IMG/VR virus record: IMGVR_UViG_3300024308_000016
Span: 62,001 to 126,000 of that record
DNA length: 64,000 nt
Direction: 5' to 3' (one strand)
Part shown: positions 28,303 through 58,651 of the stretch, piece after piece
Numbering within the stretch: the stretch's first letter is position 1
Layout: every line of letters starts with the position of its first letter
Notes under the pieces: generated by a model
Database searches by the model: none
What the model was told of the DNA's origin: nothing
What the model saw: the letters and a program-made list of their open reading frames with translations, nothing else
Made by a program: the position numbers and the translations under genes

Positions 28303-28701
28303 ATGAGCTTTATGGCCAATGGGCCGATCTATATCTATGAAAAGCCTGATCCTCCCGGAGACCTGAGCTCCACAGTGGAACGGATCAAGGAGTTGATCGT
28401 TCGCCACATTCTTACCAACGATGTGGATCTGAACCCTCAGCACCTGCGCCTGACTTGGATGGGGCACAAGATGCTGGGGTTTGCTTACCTTCACGAAGAC
28501 CAATTGCAGGTGGCGTACAGTGGCTACTTGGTGCATACGCCGACAGGCTGGAAGATGAATGAAGGTAAGCCCTGCTCTCGGTTCAGCTTTGAGCCTCCCC
28601 AGGACATGCACACGGAAGCCTCTGACGAAGCCGACTTGGGCAAGCTTTACAACGCGCTGTTCGCAGCTGAGCTGCACGACCGCCTCGATAAGGCCATCTG
28701 A
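28303..28701 (+). CDS. hypothetical protein
   Basis: AAGGAGG upstream. Confidence 0.7.
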   Translation: MSFMANGPIYIYEKPDPPGDLSSTVERIKELIVRHILTNDVDLNPQHLRLTWMGHKMLGFAYLHEDQLQVAYSGYLVHTPTGWKMNEGKPCSRFSFEPPQDMHTEASDEADLGKLYNALFAAELHDRLDKAI

Positions 28702-28716
28702 CTGGCCGCATAGATA

Positions 28717-28754
28717 CCACTATCCTCGATGCCTTTGGGCATCGAGGATAGTGG
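28717..28754. terminator. long hairpin between convergent genes
   Basis: CCACTATCCTCGATGCC-TTTG-GGCATCGAGGATAGTGG, 17 bp stem. Confidence 0.75.
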
Positions 28755-28761
28755 AGTTTGC

Positions 28762-29403
28762 TTAGCCTGGAGTGATGCTGAACCGCTTTATCCAGCCCTT
28801 CATGTTACCTCCGTGGCCGTTGGCCATAGAGAACAGAGCGCAAAGCTGATCGGATAGGTACGTCGAACCGATAGACTGTGTGTCTGTGATGTTTGATTCG
28901 AGCTCTCGGATTGTCATTGCCGACCCATCCCTGGTTATTCTCAACCGAACCAGTTTATTGGTTGGCGCGGCTCCCGGGAAGAACGATGTGGCGTGTCCTC
29001 CGCCGGCAAACGTCGCAAAGAATGCCCATAGCCATTTACCACCTTGGGTAATCTCGTACATGTTCCAGCCTAGTTTTGATTCGGATTGACTTCCAAAATC
29101 GAACAGTTGGGCATAGGTATTCTCTGTGACGTAGTCTATCTCCATGGAGAATTTACTCAGCATGAGAAGATTGAAGCGTTTGGTTGGTTCGAGAAATCGG
29201 ACGTTTCCATCCAAACGGTAACACTTTCCGTACGTGGGGTGATCGACGACACCGTCAGTGGGAGTGTTTTGGACAATTCGCTGAAAATTCCAAGTTTCCT
29301 TGGACTGAATATTCAATCCCAGTGTTCCGACGGGTACATCCTCGAATTGGATCAGGAAGTACGGGTTGGGATTGACATTCGTGGAAGAAAGGAGTTCGAT
29401 CAT
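28762..29403 (-). CDS. concanavalin A/LamG-like virion adhesin module
   Basis: Starts MIELLSS; FSMEID..QLFDFG..WLWAF..RLRITRDG..GWIKRFSIT pattern; lower GC. Confidence 0.6.
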   Translation of the reverse strand: MIELLSSTNVNPNPYFLIQFEDVPVGTLGLNIQSKETWNFQRIVQNTPTDGVVDHPTYGKCYRLDGNVRFLEPTKRFNLLMLSKFSMEIDYVTENTYAQLFDFGSQSESKLGWNMYEITQGGKWLWAFFATFAGGGHATSFFPGAAPTNKLVRLRITRDGSAMTIRELESNITDTQSIGSTYLSDQLCALFSMANGHGGNMKGWIKRFSITPG

Positions 29404-29550
29404 GATGTAGCCTTAGAGTATGGTCCACAGGATCAATAGTCCGGCCCAATAAATGCGACTTGTCTAAGGGCCGTGACGTCATACTAACTATTTTTACGAC
29501 CCTCTACTCGTATGGGTTGAGGACTTTAGCCTCTACTTTGGAGAACATCA

Positions 29551-30462
29551 ATGGAATACACCAAAACAACAGCGATGGTGATGGTGGCCGCGATGGCCAT
29601 GACGGGATGCGGGCCTTCGGACAACGGCCCCACCTACGACCCCAGCGCTGCGGCGCGCAACATCACTAGCCAGATGGCTCACCAGCAAACCCAGGAAACT
29701 GCTCAGCTGCTCAAGGAACTGCAAAAGCTCGACCCCACGGTGCGTTCGGTGGACTTTGTGCTGGAAGACGGCCAAAAGACCATCCAGGTGGGTCGCGAGG
29801 CCGCTGATGGCAAACTGACCATCTGGGTGATGCCGCCGGCTGACTATGCCAAGATGGCCTCGGAGACCAACAGCAAGATGGTCGCTTCCGGTCAAGGTGG
29901 CGGCAACCCGGCCAGCCCCAACTCCCCGGCTTCGGGCGGCTATAGTGGCGGCGAGATGCTGATGAGTGCGGGAGCCGGCCTGCTCGCAGGTGCACTGATG
30001 GGTTCCATGCTCAGCAACTCCTCGGGCCGCACGGCATCGTTCACCAGCCCGCAGACCTACAACAGCTATCGCCAAGCGTCCACCAGCAGCTACCGCTCGG
30101 ACCAGCACCGCCAGAGCCTTCGTCGCGAGGATGAAGAGCGCCGCCGCAGCTCCCCGGCCGTAGGCTCCAACACCGCAGCCATGATGGCTGCGCAGCAAGC
30201 GAACATGTCCGGCGCCTCCAGCGCTGCAACAGCGGCCAACCGCTCCTCGGCCGCGACTTCGTCGTTCGCCAACAGCGCTCGTTCCATCTCCGGTGCTCCG
30301 TCTCCGGCAGCGGCGGCCACCAGCGTCAACCGCTCGGCCGCGTTCTCCTCGCCCAGCAGCTCGTACGCGAGCCGTTCGGCGTCGACTAGCCAAGCATTCA
30401 GCTCCTCTTCGGTGGGACGCTCTTCGGCAGGCGGCTTCTCCGGCGGTGCTAGCGCATCCTGA
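29551..30462 (+). CDS. lipoprotein, UPF0323/DUF1190-like, with S/A-rich tail
   Basis: Lipobox MTGC at residue 20; GGYSGGEMLMSAGAGLLAGALMGSML resembles Campylobacter Cj0371; low-complexity tail ending GGFSGG. Confidence 0.7.
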   Translation: MEYTKTTAMVMVAAMAMTGCGPSDNGPTYDPSAAARNITSQMAHQQTQETAQLLKELQKLDPTVRSVDFVLEDGQKTIQVGREAADGKLTIWVMPPADYAKMASETNSKMVASGQGGGNPASPNSPASGGYSGGEMLMSAGAGLLAGALMGSMLSNSSGRTASFTSPQTYNSYRQASTSSYRSDQHRQSLRREDEERRRSSPAVGSNTAAMMAAQQANMSGASSAATAANRSSAATSSFANSARSISGAPSPAAAATSVNRSAAFSSPSSSYASRSASTSQAFSSSSVGRSSAGGFSGGASAS

Positions 30463-30498
30463 TTCCTCCTTCCCTTTTCTCTTCAATAGAAAGCACAC

Positions 30499-31788
30499 AT
30501 GCAAGCTCCATTCATCAAGAAAGCCATCCTGCAGGTTCCTTTCCTGACGGTCGACGAGATCTTCGACCGCGAGATGCCGTTCATTGCGGCATTCAGCCAA
30601 GACCCGGTGTTCCGCAGCAACATCCACACCTGGATGGAGTTCTACGGCCGCAAGCAAGACGCACTGCCCTTCTACCAAGTCGACGCCCAGTGGGGCGAGC
30701 GGCTGCGTCAAGGTTTGACGCTGTTCATGGGCCAGATGCGTGGGGCACTGCAAAACCTCTTCGACACCAGCACGGACGAAGAACTCATGGCGATGTTCCC
30801 GATGCCGGGCGTGGAGCCAGCAGTGAACCTGGCGTTCGTGCAATACGCCCGTTACACGTTCGCCAAGGACCATCCCGCGTTTGGCGGCCGCTTCGATCTG
30901 CAGGTGGACCCCAACACGGGCAAGGCGTTCATCTACGAATTCAACGGCGACACGCCCGCGATGCTGTTCGAGTCGATGAACCTGCAAAACCTCTTTGCCG
31001 TGGTCAATGAAGACGAAGAAGCGCAGCTCAACGACATGTGGGTCAAGACCGAAGAGCGCGGCCTGGTGGACAGCTCCTCCAAGGTGGCCGTGGTGGTCAA
31101 CACCAACTGGCCTGAGGATCTGGGCACCAGCGAAGCCATCGCGCAACTGCTGGAGCAGTCGGGTGCTCAGGTCTTCCTGGCCGACATGACCATGTTCCAG
31201 TTCGACAGCGCAGGCGATCCGGACCGCAATCCCTTCTTCCTGACGTCGGTGCCGTCCACGGACCTGACACACGTGCACATTATGCTGCCGTGGGAGGAAA
31301 TGGTGCAGTCCAACCCGCAGGCCATCTCCCGTTGGCGTGAATGGGGTGACAAGGTCCGTTTCTTCGAACCGGCGTGGCGCTGGTTCATGAGCCACAAGAA
31401 GTTCCTGACGCTGCCTGAGCTGCAGACCTACGGCCTGGCGCGCAGCCATGCCAACTGGGCCGACTACCAGCTCGAGCACGTCACGTTGATCGAGACACCC
31501 AGTGTGGCCGAGGGCGGCTATGTGGCCAAGCCCCAGCTGGGTCGCCAGTCGGCGTCGGTCGTGGTTCATCGTCCGGGGCAGGCGCCTGTGACCAGCCGCA
31601 ACGACAACTACGTCGACTACCCGGTCGTGTACCAGCCCTACAAGGCTCCTGGCCAGATCGAAGGCGCCAACTTCATCGCCTGCATGTGGATGGCAGGTGA
31701 AGAAGCGGCGTCGCTGGCTTTCCGTGAGTTCGACGGCCAGATCCTGGATCTGGAAAATGAACGCGTGATCTTGCACGAACTCGTGTAA
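30499..31788 (+). CDS. glutathionylspermidine synthase-like ATP-grasp ligase (YgiC/YjfC/Cj0372 type)
   Basis: GRFDL...YEFNGDTP.MLFES, FEPAW...SHK, YVAKPQLGRQSASV, VYQ, LAFRE motifs. Confidence 0.85.
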   Translation: MQAPFIKKAILQVPFLTVDEIFDREMPFIAAFSQDPVFRSNIHTWMEFYGRKQDALPFYQVDAQWGERLRQGLTLFMGQMRGALQNLFDTSTDEELMAMFPMPGVEPAVNLAFVQYARYTFAKDHPAFGGRFDLQVDPNTGKAFIYEFNGDTPAMLFESMNLQNLFAVVNEDEEAQLNDMWVKTEERGLVDSSSKVAVVVNTNWPEDLGTSEAIAQLLEQSGAQVFLADMTMFQFDSAGDPDRNPFFLTSVPSTDLTHVHIMLPWEEMVQSNPQAISRWREWGDKVRFFEPAWRWFMSHKKFLTLPELQTYGLARSHANWADYQLEHVTLIETPSVAEGGYVAKPQLGRQSASVVVHRPGQAPVTSRNDNYVDYPVVYQPYKAPGQIEGANFIACMWMAGEEAASLAFREFDGQILDLENERVILHELV

Positions 31789-31867
31789 GCATCATACCCT
31801 CTCGTCCCCTGAGCCCGCAAAGGCTCGGGGGATATCTCTTTGTGTTTCGCAATAGAAAGAACGTATC

Positions 31868-33193
31868 ATGGAAAAGATCGGCGACATCGTCAACAAGACA
31901 GAACAAGAAACTCAAGGCACTCCCGAGCAGCCGGTGCTGGGCGACATCCTCGAAAAGCTCGAACCTCTGGACGAGACCTTCCGTTTGGTAGGCGTTCAAG
32001 ATGCCGGCAGCTTCGATGGCTTTCAGCCGTCCAGTAGCGGCGACGAGTGCCTGACCGAACAGATCTTGGACGACCGCATCAAACGCCTGGAAGGCCTGGT
32101 GATGACTCCGATCCAGACGGCGTTTGCCACACAAAACTCCGCACTGGCCATGGAAGTGCGCAATCAGATCAAGCGTGCCGTGCAAAACTGCTTGATAAGT
32201 GGTCAGTACGGATCCGTCAGCGCCTTCAACAGCATCGAACAAGAGCTGAAAAGCGCTTTGGCTGTGCGTGGTGATGACGTGCAGCGGCGCACCACGCTGA
32301 TGGTGCAGTCCAAGAAGGGCATCAAACAGCTGCTGGTGAGCCAAAGCTACACCATCGCTGACGTCTACTCCAAGGACGGCCACTACCTGGCTACCCGGGA
32401 CATGAACGACACGATGACCACGCTGGTGGCTGTCCGTATCCCCCGGGTGTTCGACCACCAGCACGGCTCGGCCATTGAAGACGAGTTCACCCAGTGGGGC
32501 GAGCGGCTGTACCTGCTGCTGGAAGTGTCCATCCCGCTGAAGGAAGGCAATGCCGGCGTGTTCCTGGAATACATCGAGTCCAAGGACGACATCATCACCA
32601 ACCGCCTGCATCATCTTGCGGCTTTGATGATCAAGATCCTGCCCGATGAAGCTCTCCGGGGTTTCTTCAACCGCCACAACTTCAGCGCCGGCCTGTCCGA
32701 GTACGACAATCCCCGCGTGACCATCCACACCAAGCCGCATGTCTCCGGCTCGTGCACGGATACAGAGACCAAGCTCGTGGTGACTGCTGACCAGTTCAAG
32801 AAGGCCATCGAGGACCGCCTGTCCGGGATACCGGGCGTCAAGGTCAACGATATGTACTCCTGCGGGAAATCGTTGGTCTACCACTTCGTCAACAATAACG
32901 ACGATGTGCTGGCGCGTGCGTTCATCCGGGTGGACGACTCCATCACGGTCGCCACGGTATCTCACCGCGACACATCGGTGGAGTTGATCCATCGGTACCT
33001 GCGTGAGATGCTGGACCGGCTGCTGGCGGAGAACACTGGTAAGCTCAAGGATGTCGCCAACAAGAGCCGCGCACACGCCGTCGACACGCTGACGAAGTAC
33101 TACGCACTCACCAACCCCCGATGGCGTAAGATGCTGGGGCTGAAGCCCGTTATCACGGACAAGGACGACCGCCGTCTGCTGGGTTTGGACTGA
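31868..33193 (+). CDS. hypothetical protein
   Basis: 441 aa; AATAGAAAG at 31851. Confidence 0.8.
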   Translation: MEKIGDIVNKTEQETQGTPEQPVLGDILEKLEPLDETFRLVGVQDAGSFDGFQPSSSGDECLTEQILDDRIKRLEGLVMTPIQTAFATQNSALAMEVRNQIKRAVQNCLISGQYGSVSAFNSIEQELKSALAVRGDDVQRRTTLMVQSKKGIKQLLVSQSYTIADVYSKDGHYLATRDMNDTMTTLVAVRIPRVFDHQHGSAIEDEFTQWGERLYLLLEVSIPLKEGNAGVFLEYIESKDDIITNRLHHLAALMIKILPDEALRGFFNRHNFSAGLSEYDNPRVTIHTKPHVSGSCTDTETKLVVTADQFKKAIEDRLSGIPGVKVNDMYSCGKSLVYHFVNNNDDVLARAFIRVDDSITVATVSHRDTSVELIHRYLREMLDRLLAENTGKLKDVANKSRAHAVDTLTKYYALTNPRWRKMLGLKPVITDKDDRRLLGLD

Positions 33194-34683: not shown

Positions 34684-35232
34684 ATGTCCAACGCCAAGAT
34701 CACCTATACCCTGCACCGCATCGTCTCCCTGGATCGCGAAAGCGCGTTCCGTCTTCTGACGCTGATCGACCACACTCCCGATGTGGACTCCCGCGGCACC
34801 ATCAAGTTCCATGGCCCCGTCAAGTGGACCAGCGCCTCTAAGCTGGTGCAGATCGAGGCAGTCGAAGAAACCAACGGCCGCATCCGCTTCACGGTGCGCC
34901 TGCGCGAAAGCGATCAGCGCAACGCCATCTACGAGTGGCTGAACCTGGTCAACCGTGCTGACAACGGCGTCAAGGGTACTGTGCGTAAATCGCTGGTGCC
35001 ACTGGCCTCGATGGTTCGCAGCCTGGGTACCAGCCCCTACTACCGTGTGCGTTCGCATGTGGAGTTCCAGGACCTGCTGAGTTTCTTCGCGATGGAAAGC
35101 CAGGATGACCCCACGTTCCCATGCCTGATCTCCTGTGCTCACCTGGAGATCAAGCGCGTGACCACTATCACTGAGTGCGACTTGTTGGCGGCTTTGTCCA
35201 TGCTGACTGGCTCTGAGTACTCCGCTCAGTAA
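34684..35232 (+). CDS. hypothetical protein
   Basis: First ORF after P3; AATAGAAAG at 34669. Confidence 0.75.
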   Translation: MSNAKITYTLHRIVSLDRESAFRLLTLIDHTPDVDSRGTIKFHGPVKWTSASKLVQIEAVEETNGRIRFTVRLRESDQRNAIYEWLNLVNRADNGVKGTVRKSLVPLASMVRSLGTSPYYRVRSHVEFQDLLSFFAMESQDDPTFPCLISCAHLEIKRVTTITECDLLAALSMLTGSEYSAQ

Positions 35233-56648: not shown

Positions 56649-57098
56649 ATGAAAGCTGTTATGAACCGCAACAAGATTTCGGAAGTTGAAGTGACTGTTT
56701 TGACCCAGTTGTTGACAACTGCCATGCAAGACGCCATCGATAACACGACGTCCATGGGGTATGCCCATCTTCGCTGTGTGGAGGAAGACATCGAGAAAGC
56801 GTGGGTGCGCCGCCAGGCATTTGCTATCGATGTGTTTCGCAAGATGCGGCAAGCCGAGGGTTTGAGCGCAACCATCGAGATTGCGCAAGACAACATCTCC
56901 GGCGTTCGCATCAACGTCTTGGAGACGGAAAGCGGGGAGTTCTACTATGAGGTCGTCTATCTTCTCGACGGAGCTAAGAACGTCCTCAAGCCTCCTTCGT
57001 ATTGGGAGATGAACGAGACGGTGAATATGGCGGACTTGCTGCATGACGCCCAACTCGACATCCAGCAAAGAGCAAGCAACGAGAAAGGAAAGACATGA
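56649..57098 (+). CDS. hypothetical protein
   Basis: First ORF after P7; ATGA-coupled to the next gene. Confidence 0.7.
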   Translation: MKAVMNRNKISEVEVTVLTQLLTTAMQDAIDNTTSMGYAHLRCVEEDIEKAWVRRQAFAIDVFRKMRQAEGLSATIEIAQDNISGVRINVLETESGEFYYEVVYLLDGAKNVLKPPSYWEMNETVNMADLLHDAQLDIQQRASNEKGKT

Positions 57099-58651
57099 AG
57101 ATTGAGTCGGATTCTGGCACTATCTTGAGCCAGGATAAAAGTGTGCGTATCTCGCACACCGAGGATGGCGTCAAGCGTGGGGTGACTTTTCCGATCACCC
57201 TGTACAAGCAAGACTACTTCAAAAGCGACGAGACGTTCTCCAGCATCAACAGCTATTGGGCCCAGCTGCCCCAGGCTGACCAAGATGAGATCTTCCGGAT
57301 CTACGAGAACATCCGTGAGCTGTTTGACTCGGTCAATGGGATCAAGGAGCTCAATGACGAACTGAAGGTGTATGTGGCCAACCTCATGGCTTTCCACAGC
57401 GCCCCAGATGTCGAGCGATGGATCCGCACTACCTCTGGGCTGGAAGTGCCCAAGAGCGTGCAGCAAGAGTACAGCTTTGACGTGGACAAGAACACGACGC
57501 GGGACCAGACCTACATCTACTCCGACTACCTGGGGTTGATGAGCCTGTCGGTGATCCTGCGTGCGATGATCCCGATCTGGGCCGTCTACAACAAGACCAT
57601 ACGCAGTGACAGCGGCAAGTCCTCCAAGGACACGCACTCGTTCCAATTGCTGGAGAAGTCCAGCATCTACAAGTGCGAGCCTATGGAGCGGCTGCGCCGG
57701 TATATCCAGGCCAACCTCAATAAGAGCTCCCACACCGGCAACCACACGCTGGAGTTGCTGTGCTCGGACGACATGCCCGAGATCAACCTGGCGCTGGTAT
57801 GCGTGAGAAAGCTGTGCCTGGGAGAGCTCAGGGTCGATGATCCCAAGCAAAACCTGGCGGCGCTGGTGTACAACTACATCGTGGACAGACCTCCTCCACA
57901 GGGCCAGGACTTCTCCAAGCGCGTGCTGGAGAAGAAGATCCCCACTGAAGGTGGCGGGGAATCCGGGGAAAACAATGGATCGACCCTGGAACTGTACAAG
58001 GCCCGTTCGACCGTCACCGTCGGTCGGATCGCCGAAATGGAGTACGCGTGGAAGGATCCCCACAACCTGGCCAGGTATCTGTGCCCTGAATACGTACCCA
58101 GTCATCTGGATCGAGCACTGGAGACGACCCAAGAGCTGTACACGCATACCGTGCATCCGTGCATGTTGACGCTGGCTCAGTGGGTACTGGCTCCGGTATT
58201 CCCACCGATGGGTCTGTTCTATATGGACACCAACCTGATCCTGCGGGCATTCGCAGTGACCGAGACCGTGTTGCGCGGACGAGGTTTCAAGTCTTTGGCT
58301 CTGCTGTCGTCGGCGTATTCGCTCGATGACGAGGACGAAGGCATGCGAGTGACACCTGTGGGCTCCAAGAGCCATATCGGAGCAGAGATTCAGGAGCGGA
58401 TGCTGGGACCCTTCCCCTACGCCCGTGAACAAAGAAAGCGCACGGCTACTCCTGTGCGCACCTGCTTTGTCACGGAAGACATCAAGGACTTGTCGTCGAA
58501 GTTCTTGGAGCACACCTGGCGCGCTACTGCAGACATCGAGTTGGTCACTGAGGTGCTGCGCACCTCCAGCGTTCGACGGATCCCCATCCCTCCGAACTTG
58601 AGAAGTGAACTGGCTCTGATGCTGCTGGACGCTGAAGAGCGGTTCGAGTAA
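57095..58651 (+). CDS. non-virion RNA polymerase specificity subunit (phiKZ gp68-like)
   Basis: 518 aa; INSYWAQLP..QDEIF.IY, TY..SDY.GL..LS..LRAMIPIW and QW.L..VFPP patterns; synteny. Confidence 0.7.
   Translation: MKIESDSGTILSQDKSVRISHTEDGVKRGVTFPITLYKQDYFKSDETFSSINSYWAQLPQADQDEIFRIYENIRELFDSVNGIKELNDELKVYVANLMAFHSAPDVERWIRTTSGLEVPKSVQQEYSFDVDKNTTRDQTYIYSDYLGLMSLSVILRAMIPIWAVYNKTIRSDSGKSSKDTHSFQLLEKSSIYKCEPMERLRRYIQANLNKSSHTGNHTLELLCSDDMPEINLALVCVRKLCLGELRVDDPKQNLAALVYNYIVDRPPPQGQDFSKRVLEKKIPTEGGGESGENNGSTLELYKARSTVTVGRIAEMEYAWKDPHNLARYLCPEYVPSHLDRALETTQELYTHTVHPCMLTLAQWVLAPVFPPMGLFYMDTNLILRAFAVTETVLRGRGFKSLALLSSAYSLDDEDEGMRVTPVGSKSHIGAEIQERMLGPFPYAREQRKRTATPVRTCFVTEDIKDLSSKFLEHTWRATADIELVTEVLRTSSVRRIPIPPNLRSELALMLLDAEERFE

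What the first reader, a model, noticed from the sequence alone, without database searches (positions are those of the whole stretch)
29551..31788. Phage copy of the lipoprotein + glutathionylspermidine-synthase-like module
A UPF0323/DUF1190-like lipoprotein is followed by a GspS-like ATP-grasp ligase, mirroring bacterial Cj0371-Cj0372 and YgiB-YgiC pairs, whose real substrates are unresolved. Codon usage is fully phage-like. Inference: the ligase modifies polyamines, peptides or the lipoprotein's S/A-rich tail to alter envelope stress or polyamine-based anti-phage responses.
Basis: partly seen in the sequence, partly recalled or inferred. Interest (0 to 1): 0.6.

Follow-up and report, generated by a model that had tools for sequence, protein, structure and literature searches.

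The report
Phage membrane-anchor plus peptide–polyamine ligase pair
A jumbo phage carries a two-gene cassette, a membrane-anchored lipoprotein with a long floppy tail followed by a YgiC/YjfC-type ATP-dependent ligase. The same pairing recurs in many phages and bacteria, and a structure model suggests the ligase grips the tail, which hints at what this enzyme family's unknown natural substrate may be.

Summary
Window 29551-30462 (+) encodes a 303-aa protein with a lipobox. Window 30499-31788 (+) encodes a 429-aa GSP_synth ATP-grasp ligase (Pfam 1.1e-33) whose best solved relatives are E. coli YjfC and YgiC. The pair looks like one transcription unit, bounded by a divergent upstream gene and a terminator-like hairpin.

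The pairing is not special to this phage. All 31 IMG/VR loci, all GenBank phages inspected and 16 of 18 bacterial loci have the same lipoprotein type just upstream of the ligase. The bacterial set includes YgiB-YgiC, YjfM-YjfC and the Campylobacter/Helicobacter UPF0323 pairs.

The lipoprotein is not a Pfam DUF1190 member. It belongs to a mostly phage-borne sister family (phrog_13808) with a different ectodomain but the same layout: anchor, ectodomain, Gly/Ala/Met helix, basic stretch, and an acid-free Ser/Gly tail ending in Gly or Ser.

The ligase keeps every catalytic residue of GspS but carries YgiC-type substrate-pocket residues. A controlled complex prediction (score 0.84, best control 0.01) places tail residues 274-286, the most conserved tail block, against the ligase's substrate-pocket subdomain.

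My best reading is that the ligase docks on the cytoplasmic tail and probably amidates its C-terminus with a host polyamine. This is inferred, not shown. The purpose of the cassette in infection is unknown.

The parts
29404..29550 (+). Intergenic region between the minus-strand gene 28762-29403 and the lipoprotein gene. The promoter of the unit is presumed to lie here. GGAG sits at 29540-29543, 7 nt before the ATG.
   Evidence: The sigma-70 consensus scan found no promoter, so the promoter is inferred from gene arrangement only.
29551..30462 (+). Lipoprotein gene (P0001, 303 aa), a member of phrog_13808. I call this family 'type A'; it is the counterpart of DUF1190/UPF0323.
   Evidence: Variant sites are 2 synonymous and 1 conservative.
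29551..29610 (+). Signal peptide and lipobox (residues 1-20, A-M-T-G-C20).
   Evidence: Sequence. The Cys is conserved across the family alignments. Paenalcaligenes homologues lack the Cys.
29641..29889 (+). Small exported alpha/beta domain (residues 31-113): helix 31-60, three strands, helix 96-113. It holds the family's invariant D61-P62.
   Evidence: AlphaFold2 pLDDT 80-94 in this part and alignment A5. There is no clear fold match: Foldseek finds nothing at E<=0.001 and the best VIA Z is 4.4.
29956..30012 (+). Gly/Ala/Met-rich hydrophobic helix (residues 136-154), the presumed transmembrane segment.
   Evidence: Kyte-Doolittle mean 1.61 over 19 residues. Flanks are net acidic before and basic after across 51 homologues. 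Modelled as helix 135-154 at low confidence.
30013..30459 (+). Disordered Ser/Ala/Gly-rich tail (residues 155-303), presumed cytoplasmic. A basic block (RREDEERRR) follows the helix. The last 20 residues contain no acidic residue.
30370..30408 (+). Conserved tail block S274-S286 (SRSASTSQAFSSS, centred on F283), the predicted docking site for the ligase.
   Evidence: Complex prediction interface. It is the best-conserved part of the tail among the closest relatives.
30484..30493 (+). CAATAGAAAG, the phage's own gene-start motif, 5 nt before the ligase ATG.
   Evidence: 17 copies, all on the + strand, against 2.6 expected.
30499..31788 (+). YgiC/YjfC-type ATP-grasp carboxylate-amine ligase (P0002, 429 aa).
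30889..30957 (+). Catalytic core motifs R131-x-D133 and E147-F-N149-G-D151-T-P153.
   Evidence: These columns are invariant in alignments A2 and A4 and map to GspS R316, D318, E330, N332 and D334.
31114..31119 (+). E206-D207, equivalent to GspS E391-E392. E391 is the key spermidine-binding residue.
   Evidence: role of E391 from PMC6272389.
31186..31323 (+). Ligase residues 230-275, the main predicted contact surface for the tail. It lies in the central subdomain next to the P264-W-E266 motif.
   Evidence: These residues are not more conserved than average.
31804..31843 (+). Terminator-like hairpin (12-bp stem, 8 G-C pairs) with a T-rich tail, 16 nt after the ligase stop.

Best explanation
The two genes form one self-contained membrane-associated module carried by a distant phiKZ-like jumbo phage.

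Shown:
- Gene 1 encodes a lipobox protein with a small exported domain, one Gly/Ala/Met-rich hydrophobic helix and a long disordered tail.
- Gene 2 encodes a signal-less ATP-grasp ligase of the YgiC/YjfC (peptide-spermidine ligase) branch with all catalytic residues intact.
- This pairing is conserved across phages and bacteria.

Inferred:
- The helix spans the inner membrane, so the tail lies in the cytoplasm.
- The ligase docks on the conserved block around F283 near the tail's end.
- As GspS does with the C-terminal glycine of glutathione, the ligase phosphorylates the tail's free C-terminal carboxylate and joins it to a host polyamine (spermidine or putrescine). That carboxylate is the only carboxylate in the last 20 residues.
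- The product would be a membrane-tethered, polyamine-capped tail. At the least, the ligase would be held at the inner face of the membrane.

What this does for the infection is not known. Candidates include membrane maintenance or local polyamine handling.
For: - Family and fold of the ligase: Pfam GSP_synth 1.1e-33. The nearest solved sequences are YjfC and YgiC. The AlphaFold2 model has pLDDT 90, and its best Foldseek match is YjfC 7uk6 at E 4.8e-22 with TM 0.72/0.79.
- Catalytic residues of GspS are kept: R316, D318, E330, N332, E391, K498, K533, R538 and R598.
- YgiC and YjfC are reported as peptide-spermidine ligases with an unknown physiological peptide. The GspS mechanism acts on a C-terminal Gly carboxylate.
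- Co-occurrence: the lipoprotein lies directly upstream in 31 of 31 viral loci and 16 of 18 bacterial loci, in three closer relatives and in all GenBank phages inspected. All 18 phage records holding the lipoprotein also hold the ligase.
- Co-variation: ligase subclades match lipoprotein subtypes.
- Docking: ipSAE 0.85, 0.84 and 0.02, median 0.84, best control 0.01. That mark was reached by 58 of 80 solved complexes and 2 of 110 mismatched pairs. The runs agree in at least 20% of contacts and the partner's pLDDT is at least 42. The interface is tail 274-286 against ligase 201, 230-240, 246-247, 261-275.
- That tail block is the most conserved part of the tail. The last 33 residues are identical in a relative that is 69% identical overall, and the motif persists at 27% identity.
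- None of 54 homologues has Asp or Glu in the last 20 residues, and the last residue is Gly or Ser in 49 of 54.
- Charges follow the positive-inside rule.
- The unit is bounded by a divergent gene and a hairpin.
Against: - No experiment, and no direct evidence of topology. The hydrophobic segment is only borderline as a transmembrane helix in much of the family (Kyte-Doolittle 0.7-1.8; E. coli YgiB 0.72). YgiB is predicted in the literature to be an outer-membrane lipoprotein.
- One of three complex runs failed (0.02). The partner's pLDDT is only 42-47. The model places residues 274-286, not the C-terminus itself.
- The ligase's interface residues are not more conserved than average.
- A tail-motif HMM could not separate the other subfamilies from shuffled tails.
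- This protein ends in ...GGASAS, not the -GG of most relatives.
- RNA evidence is limited to short contigs on the ligase gene in two metatranscriptome runs. None bridges the two genes, and DNA carry-over is not excluded.
Confidence: 0.42

Rival explanations
1. The ligase is a soluble auxiliary metabolic enzyme. It makes a small-molecule conjugate (glutathionylspermidine or another short peptide-polyamine amide) to buffer thiols or polyamines in the infected cell, possibly blunting polyamine-based host responses. The lipoprotein merely regulates or localises it, or is only a co-transcribed neighbour.
For: The protein is in Pfam GSP_synth and is annotated in PHROGs as glutathionylspermidine synthase. 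E206, equivalent to the spermidine-binding E391 of GspS, is kept. YgiC and YjfC were shown to act on free peptides in vitro.
Against: The CHAP amidase domain is absent, and the GspS equivalog model scores 14 bits against a cut-off of 882. GspS pocket residues S337, C338, D387, D389 and D610 are replaced as in YgiC, which lacks Gsp synthetase activity according to the review read. This reading does not explain the near-absolute linkage and co-variation with the lipoprotein or the predicted docking. The phage has no polyamine-synthesis genes.
Confidence: 0.3
2. The lipoprotein works on its own in the envelope, for example in superinfection exclusion, lysis timing or receptor masking. The ligase would be functionally independent, and the linkage would reflect shared regulation only.
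For: Phage lipoproteins often serve in exclusion. A Cor-like exclusion gene lies near the pair in Lu11, and rI lies near it in Aes012. The ectodomain is the part that differs between subfamilies, as expected for a surface-facing function.
Against: The same pairing is kept in chromosomal, non-prophage contexts in bacteria. It is also kept across three ectodomain types, while the helix, the tail layout and the ligase stay constant. The tail-ligase docking prediction passes its controls.
Confidence: 0.12
3. The ligase serves DNA chemistry or packaging. It could supply or attach polyamines for hypermodified DNA, as with the putrescinyl-thymine of PhiW-14, or for charge neutralisation of a very large genome.
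For: PhiW-14, known from the literature (my own knowledge) for putrescinylated thymine, carries a close homologue. Many carriers are jumbo phages.
Against: The pair also occurs in T4-like Aeromonas phages, in roughly 95-kb Pseudomonas phages and in bacterial chromosomes. It is always joined to a membrane protein, which DNA chemistry does not need. I did not search for hypermodification genes here.
Confidence: 0.05

Closest known systems
E. coli YgiB-YgiC (tolC-ygiBC operon) and YjfM-YjfC (yjfIJKLMC operon): a DUF1190 lipoprotein plus a peptide-spermidine ligase
   Same: Gene order is the same, with the lipoprotein directly upstream of the ligase. The ligase fold and catalytic residues match, and YjfC is the best structural match. 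The lipoprotein layout matches: lipobox, ectodomain, Gly/Met-rich hydrophobic segment, basic stretch, and an acid-free Ser/Gly tail ending in small residues.
   Different: The ectodomain is unrelated in sequence and lacks the four Cys of DUF1190, and the Pfam DUF1190 model does not match. The ligase is only about 20% identical to YgiC. The tail is about twice as long. None of the PspA, DUF350 or DUF2491 partners of the yjf operon is present in the phage.
Campylobacter/Helicobacter UPF0323 lipoprotein (Cj0371/HP0232 type, NCBIfam NF003146) plus the adjacent GspS-like ligase
   Same: Same pairing and layout. The helix and the segment after it resemble the window protein. A 53%-identical relative of the window protein (P0006) and PhiW-14 gp89 hit NF003146 weakly, at 8e-4 and 6.5e-4.
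   Different: The window protein itself does not hit NF003146. Profile-profile probability is only 58%. The ectodomain differs, and the ligases belong to the other main branch of the tree.
Phage lipoprotein + ligase pairs: Delftia phage PhiW-14 gp89-gp91, Pseudomonas phages phiPMW gp104-gp102, Lu11 gp278-gp277 and vB_PpS_SYP, and Vibrio phage VPMCC14 (phrog_13808 + phrog_6215)
   Same: Same two families and the same order. The window pair groups with PhiW-14 and the Alcaligenaceae pairs in both the ligase tree and the lipoprotein insert.
   Different: The window ligase sits on a long branch and is 33-36% identical to these. Its only close relatives are uncultured: 78% and 40-43% identical. The tail is longer and ends in GGASAS. 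In those phages the ligase is annotated as glutathionylspermidine synthase and the lipoprotein as hypothetical.
E. coli bifunctional glutathionylspermidine synthetase/amidase (Gss)
   Same: ATP-grasp fold, catalytic residues and the acyl-phosphate chemistry on a C-terminal carboxylate.
   Different: There is no CHAP amidase domain, and the substrate-pocket residues differ. NCBIfam NF007801 scores 14 bits against a cut-off of 882.
[quoted passage not shown]
   Same: It is a precedent for an ATP-grasp enzyme acting on the C-terminal carboxylate of a specific protein (title and abstract of PMC10375531).
   Different: It is a different ATP-grasp family that adds glutamate, not an amine, and its substrate is not membrane-bound. 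This is an analogy only and was not tested here.

Membership tests
GSP_synth (PF03738), YgiC/YjfC-type peptide-polyamine ligases | Match to the family HMM above the curated threshold | tested here: met
   117.4 bits against a cut-off of 29.3, E 1.1e-33. phrog_6215 at 4.4e-67.
GSP_synth (PF03738), YgiC/YjfC-type peptide-polyamine ligases | ATP-grasp fold of the GspS/YgiC type | tested here: met
   AlphaFold2 pLDDT 90, pTM 0.90. Foldseek top matches are YjfC 7uk6 at E 4.8e-22 with TM 0.72/0.79, then GspS 2io8 and YgiC 7uk8.
GSP_synth (PF03738), YgiC/YjfC-type peptide-polyamine ligases | Catalytic, ATP/Mg-binding and amine-binding residues (GspS R316, D318, E330, N332, E391, K498, K533, R538, R598) | tested here: met
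   They map to R131, D133, E147, N149, E206, K300, K344, R349 and R409. These columns are invariant in alignments A2 and A4.
GSP_synth (PF03738), YgiC/YjfC-type peptide-polyamine ligases | ATP-dependent ligation of a peptide carboxylate to spermidine | not testable with these tools
   This needs an enzyme assay. The activity is known for E. coli YgiC and YjfC only, through citation of Pederick et al. 2023. I could not read that paper.
Bifunctional glutathionylspermidine synthetase/amidase (Gss, NF007801) | N-terminal CHAP amidase domain and a full-length match to the equivalog model | tested here: not met
   14.1 bits against a cut-off of 882, matching the C-terminal part only. The protein is 429 aa against 619 aa for Gss.
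Bifunctional glutathionylspermidine synthetase/amidase (Gss, NF007801) | Substrate-pocket residues S337, D387 and D389 (PMC6272389), and C338 and D610 (my recollection) | tested here: not met
   They are replaced by A154, T202, W204, M155 and R422, the same pattern as in YgiC-type enzymes.
DUF1190 (PF06693; YgiB/YjfM) | Match to the Pfam model | tested here: not met
   No hit at E<=0.1 for the protein and none at E<=10 in the whole phage genome. Of the 12 lipoproteins scanned, only YgiB, YjfM and the two Aeromonas-phage proteins match.
DUF1190 (PF06693; YgiB/YjfM) | Cys-rich ectodomain (four conserved Cys) | tested here: not met
   The only Cys in P0001 is the lipobox Cys20.
DUF1190 (PF06693; YgiB/YjfM) | Remote homology by profile comparison, and shared layout and gene context | tested here: inconclusive
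   hhalign of the type-A profile against a 4-sequence DUF1190 profile gives 95.6% and E 1.3e-8, collinear, against 0.7% for the reversed control. The confident core is the hydrophobic helix. Two type-A members hit NF008655 at 2e-5 and 4.7e-5, far below the cut-off.
UPF0323 (NF003146; Cj0371/HP0232) | Match to the NCBIfam model | tested here: not met
   P0001 has no hit at E<=0.1. Its relative P0006 scores 18.9 bits against a cut-off of 194. hhalign gives 58%.
phrog_13808 (phage proteins of unknown function) | Match to the family profile | tested here: met
   E 1.5e-16, residues 3-233 on profile positions 4-197 of 206. The protein aligns with 27 relatives, sharing the invariant D61-P62.
Bacterial lipoproteins | Signal peptide ending in a lipobox with an invariant Cys | tested here: met
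   MEYTKTTAMVMVAAMAMTG-C20. The sequence fits the usual lipobox pattern (sequence; the pattern is from my own knowledge). No dedicated predictor was run.

The most novel reading that the evidence does not exclude
DUF1190, UPF0323 and phrog_13808 proteins are the long-sought physiological substrates of YgiC/YjfC-type ligases. The enzyme docks on a conserved motif near the end of the protein's cytoplasmic tail and caps the protein's C-terminal carboxylate with a polyamine. That would be a protein C-terminal polyamination not described in bacteria or phages, and phages would have adopted it as a portable two-gene cassette.
Probability: 0.3. Interest if true: 0.8.

Novelty: new variant of a known kind. 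Interest (0 to 1): 0.5.

Why it matters
YgiC and YjfC have a demonstrated chemistry (peptide-spermidine ligation) but no known natural substrate. Their lipoprotein partners, including Cj0371, which is linked to Campylobacter virulence and chemotaxis, have no known mechanism. The phage copies add many independent examples of the pair stripped of all other operon partners. That argues that the two proteins are sufficient for the function. The conserved, acid-free tail end and the predicted docking give a concrete hypothesis that can be tested cheaply. If it is confirmed, it defines a new protein modification at the inner membrane and explains a gene that phage annotations currently mislabel as glutathionylspermidine synthase. 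If the hypothesis fails, the finding is an ordinary, already-annotated auxiliary gene pair.

Tried and rejected
- tblastn of P0001 against GenBank phages found nothing at 1e-5, because of the low-complexity tail. The less biased phiPMW homologue as query worked.
- The word-based protein search with P0001 returned only one relative. The search for related loci with P0002 alone found nothing. The alignment query worked.
- A motif HMM of the tail end did not separate the window protein, the UPF0323 group or most of the DUF1190 group from shuffled controls. This was inconclusive because of compositional bias.
- Fold searches of the lipoprotein model gave no credible match: Foldseek found nothing at E<=0.001 and the best VIA Z was 4.4.
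- Partner genes of the E. coli yjf operon (PspA, DUF350, DUF2491, DUF2170), a K+ channel and Band_7 were not found in the phage by tblastn. Pfam searches found no PspA, Orn/Arg decarboxylase or spermidine synthase.
- The sigma-70 consensus scan found no promoter for the unit.
- Conservation of the ligase's predicted interface residues is not above average. I report this as neutral to slightly negative.
- The careful maximum-likelihood tree did not finish, so only the quick tree (SH-aLRT support) is reported. The window ligase is a long branch there.
- I could not read Pederick et al. 2023. I therefore cannot say whether its authors already proposed YgiB or YjfM as substrates.
- I considered and rejected the 742-aa antisense ORF (29548-31776, minus strand) as a gene. 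It has no homology support, and the variant sites are synonymous in the plus-strand frames.
- I did not run the large representative-protein search, because the family scans had already settled the proteins' identity.
Full report
**What is there**

The window is bases 62001-126000 of a 272,393-bp IMG/VR virus record that CheckV rates complete. A conserved 518-aa protein in the window (57095-58648) has its best GenBank matches in phiKZ-like jumbo phages of Burkholderia, Ralstonia and Xanthomonas at 26-30% identity. The record is therefore a distant jumbo phage, plausibly of a betaproteobacterium. That host assignment is an inference.

At the coordinates given there are two plus-strand ORFs: 29551-30462 (303 aa, P0001) and 30499-31788 (429 aa, P0002). 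The gene upstream (28762-29403) is on the other strand. A GGAG lies 7 nt before the first ATG. A 12-bp G+C-rich hairpin with a T-rich tail follows the second stop at 31804-31833. The pair therefore looks like a bicistronic unit. This rests on arrangement only, because the consensus scan found no promoter.

The ligase start is preceded by CAATAGAAAG. With one mismatch allowed, that motif occurs 17 times in the window, all on the plus strand, against 2.6 expected, and the copies checked lie just upstream of start codons. Synonymous codon usage of both genes falls inside the range of the phage's other long ORFs (34th and 94th percentile). G+C is high because of the amino-acid composition.

A 27.6-kb contig from an unrelated invertebrate-gut study carries the same stretch with 14 differences in 2501 bases. 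The 12 listed differences all fall in the two genes; 9 are synonymous and 3 conservative in these frames. Both genes are thus real and under purifying selection. The 742-aa antisense ORF is not a gene.

**The ligase**

P0002 matches Pfam GSP_synth (117 bits, cut-off 29.3) and phrog_6215. Its nearest solved sequences are E. coli YjfC (7uk6) and YgiC (7uk8), followed by trypanothione synthetase. An AlphaFold2 model (pLDDT 90, pTM 0.90) is closest to YjfC (Foldseek E 4.8e-22, TM 0.72/0.79), then to GspS and YgiC.

I aligned it with E. coli Gss, taken from the K-12 record. The catalytic and nucleotide/Mg residues are all kept:
- R316, D318, E330, N332, D334, K498, K533, R538 and R598 are kept (as R131, D133, E147, N149, D151, K300, K344, R349 and R409).
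- The acidic pair E391-E392 is kept as E206-D207. A review names E391 as the key spermidine-binding residue.

Pocket residues S337, C338, D387, D389 and D610 are replaced by A154, M155, T202, W204 and R422, following the YgiC pattern. There is no CHAP amidase domain, and the Gss equivalog model scores 14 bits against a cut-off of 882.

The enzyme therefore appears to be an intact ATP-dependent carboxylate-amine ligase of the YgiC/YjfC branch, not a glutathionylspermidine synthetase. RefSeq now names YgiC and YjfC 'peptide--spermidine ligase'. A 2025 review states that they lack Gsp synthetase activity, possess peptide-spermidine ligase activity, and have no known physiological substrate.

**The lipoprotein**

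P0001 has these parts in order:
- a signal peptide ending in A-M-T-G-C20;
- a confidently modelled small alpha/beta domain at residues 31-113 (pLDDT 80-94), with no credible fold match;
- a Gly/Ala/Met-rich hydrophobic helix at 136-154 (Kyte-Doolittle 1.61);
- a basic block;
- a tail of about 150 residues that is disordered and Ser/Ala/Gly-rich.

It hits phrog_13808 (1.5e-16). It does not hit Pfam DUF1190 (no hit at E<=0.1, and none in the genome at E<=10) or the UPF0323 model NF003146.

Other members of its family give weak, full-length, sub-threshold hits to one or the other model:
- phiPMW gp104 and VPMCC14_094 hit the DUF1190 model NF008655 at 2e-5 and 4.7e-5.
- PhiW-14 gp89 and P0006 (a 53%-identical relative of P0001) hit NF003146 at 6.5e-4 and 8e-4.

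A 40-sequence profile of the family, which I call type A, aligns collinearly with small profiles of the other two families:
- DUF1190 (4 sequences): 95.6%, E 1.3e-8, reversed control 0.7%.
- UPF0323 (6 sequences): 58%, reversed control 4.9%.

The confident core of these alignments is the hydrophobic helix. The ectodomains are unrelated in sequence, and type A has none of the four Cys of DUF1190. I therefore file the protein as a sister family with the same layout, not as a member of DUF1190 or UPF0323.

**The pairing is general**

Every GenBank phage I inspected that carries the ligase has such a lipoprotein just upstream. In PhiW-14, phiPMW, SYP, Lu11, HRDY3 and VPMCC14 it is type A. In the Aeromonas phages LAh_9 and Aes012 it is classical DUF1190, and in Aes012 two small ORFs intervene.

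A search with a ligase alignment returned 31 IMG/VR loci and 18 bacterial loci. After correcting my ORF picker, 31 of 31 viral and 16 of 18 bacterial loci have the lipoprotein directly upstream. The bacterial loci include Alcaligenaceae, Azotobacter/Azomonas, Algicola and a Flavobacteriaceae MAG, all type A. Six of the seven Campylobacter/Helicobacter loci carry the UPF0323 type. The exceptions are one masked Campylobacterota locus and the cases noted under 'noticed in passing'.

Three closer uncultured relatives of the window ligase (78%, 42% and 40% identical) also have the lipoprotein upstream. Conversely, all 18 phage records that hold a type-A lipoprotein also hold the ligase. In Alcaligenes endophyticus the pair sits alone among ordinary chromosomal genes. 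The phage has no PspA, DUF350, DUF2491, Band_7 or polyamine-synthesis genes detectable here.

In a quick maximum-likelihood tree, the ligases split into a YgiC/Aeromonas-phage/Campylobacterota branch and a type-A branch. The window ligase is a long branch and joins PhiW-14 plus the Alcaligenaceae with SH-aLRT 94. Those are the same taxa whose lipoproteins share the extra helix that follows the strands. The two genes therefore travel and diverge together.

**How it probably works**

Three observations point to the tail as the ligase's partner.

First, the layout suggests the tail is cytoplasmic. Across 51 homologues, the 15 residues before the helix hold on average 1.0 Lys+Arg against 2.65 Asp+Glu. 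The 45 residues after it hold 6.8 against 2.4, which fits the positive-inside rule. Paenalcaligenes versions lack the lipobox Cys, so the lipid anchor is dispensable. The ligase has no signal peptide and needs ATP.

Second, the end of the tail is peculiar in all three subfamilies. None of 54 sequences has Asp or Glu in the last 20 residues (0 of 1080 residues, against 4.2% in the membrane-proximal tail). The last residue is Gly (27) or Ser (22) in 49 of 54. Gly+Ser+Ala make up 81% of the last five residues against 43% elsewhere in the tail. Many of these sequences are related, so the counts are not independent. The only carboxylate near the end is the C-terminal one, which is the group GspS activates on glutathione's glycine.

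Third, I ran a controlled complex prediction: ligase with alignment, tail residues 244-303, ATP and Mg.
- It scored ipSAE 0.85, 0.84 and 0.02, median 0.84, against a best control of 0.01.
- That mark was reached by 58 of 80 solved complexes and 2 of 110 mismatched pairs. These counts hold only roughly here, because I supplied my own alignment and small molecules rode along.
- The runs agree in at least 20% of contacts, and the partner's pLDDT is at least 42.
- The confident interface is tail S274-S286 (SRSASTSQAFSSS), with F283 at its centre. It contacts ligase residues 201, 230-240, 246-247, 252, 261, 263 and 267-275.
- That surface lies in the central subdomain that also carries E206/D207 and the invariant P264-W-E266. 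Residue 201 adjoins the positions equivalent to GspS D387/D389.

No solved entry of this family listed by title contains such a peptide, so a pass from memory is unlikely. Independently, this block is the best-conserved part of the tail. The last 33 residues are identical between the window protein and a relative that is 69% identical overall. The motif (R.AST.QAFSS) also persists in relatives at 27% identity whose tails otherwise differ in length and sequence.

About 10-24 residues usually separate the motif's aromatic residue from the C-terminus, judged by eye. One Helicobacter group has 33.

**Caveats**

- Nothing here is experimental.
- The hydrophobic segment is only marginal as a transmembrane helix in many homologues (YgiB 0.72), and YgiB is predicted in the literature to be an outer-membrane lipoprotein. 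A periplasmic tail modified before export, or not modified at all, remains possible.
- One of three complex runs failed. The C-terminus itself was not confidently placed.
- The ligase's interface residues are not more conserved than average (0.53 against 0.59).
- The tail-motif HMM test was inconclusive.
- Expression evidence is thin. Short contigs from two wastewater metatranscriptome runs of one study cover parts of the ligase gene at 99-100% identity. None bridges the two genes, and DNA carry-over cannot be excluded.
- The role in infection is open.

**Known or new**

GspS-like genes in phages have been reported since 2006 (phage 44RR). They were called 'unusual' with 'unclear' function in phiPMW, Lu11 and PhiW-14. 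The DUF1190 plus ATP-grasp association in bacterial PspA-type operons has been noted.

In the paper library I searched, I found three things not described:
- that the phage genes always come with a lipoprotein;
- that this phage lipoprotein family (phrog_13808) is the counterpart of DUF1190/UPF0323;
- any proposal that the lipoprotein tail is the ligase's substrate.

I could not read the primary YgiC/YjfC paper, so I cannot be sure of priority for the last point.

I rate the window's module as a new variant of a known kind. Overall interest is moderate and rests on the testable substrate hypothesis.

Noticed in passing
window, 17 sites, e.g. 23043, 23412, 23832, 26945, 30484, 31850, 34668, 35243, 36519: The motif (A/C/T)AATAGAAAG occurs 17 times, only on the + strand (2.6 expected, maximum 6 in shuffles). 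The copies I checked lie 5-10 nt before start codons. It looks like this phage's own translation-start or gene-start signal.
   Followed up: partly
window 29548-31776, minus strand: A 742-aa open frame runs antisense across both genes. It has no homology support, and variant sites are synonymous in the plus-strand frames. It is a by-product of G+C-rich codon usage and could mislead gene callers.
   Followed up: yes
window 34684-35229 (+): A 182-aa ORF three genes downstream gives a weak, sub-threshold hit to YbjN (PF10722, E 0.0036, 18 bits against 22). Chaperone-like CesT/Tir-type proteins accompany the bacterial yjf-type operons, so this may or may not be connected.
   Followed up: no
L063 5511-6398 and L064 5511-6398; L008 412-1335 (Aeromonas phage Aes012): A Band_7/SPFH gene lies directly downstream of the ligase in two uncultured relatives and near it in Aeromonas T4-like phages. 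This echoes the Band_7 variants of the bacterial PspA/polyamine operons.
   Followed up: partly
L046, L047, L048, L053 (Paenalcaligenes): The partner protein has a signal peptide but no lipobox Cys, so lipidation is not essential to the module.
   Followed up: partly
L055 2900-3826 (Campylobacterota MAG): The one ligase locus without a visible lipoprotein has a stretch of masked N. Its upstream gene has sequence motifs that look agmatinase/arginase-like (by eye, not scanned), which would be a polyamine-pathway neighbour.
   Followed up: no
L009 1785-2159 (Aeromonas phage LAh_9): A small K+-channel-like membrane protein, annotated as a Kef-type transporter, sits just upstream of the DUF1190-ligase pair. 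This recalls the potassium channel described in the bacterial operons.
   Followed up: no
window 28717-28754: A strong 17-bp-stem hairpin lies between the convergent genes 28303-28701 (+) and 28762-29403 (-). It is probably a bidirectional terminator.
   Followed up: no
window 57095-58648 (+) and the window as a whole: A conserved phrog_3209 protein links this phage distantly (26-30% identity) to phiKZ-like jumbo phages, with best hits in Burkholderia FLC9 and Ralstonia RSF1. No tRNA genes are found in the window. Most neighbours of the module have no family match.
   Followed up: partly
window 29400-31900 in public runs: Near-identical sequence occurs in a subsurface metagenome (the likely source), in invertebrate-gut metagenomes and in wastewater libraries from several studies. 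The phage or close kin is therefore environmentally widespread.
   Followed up: partly
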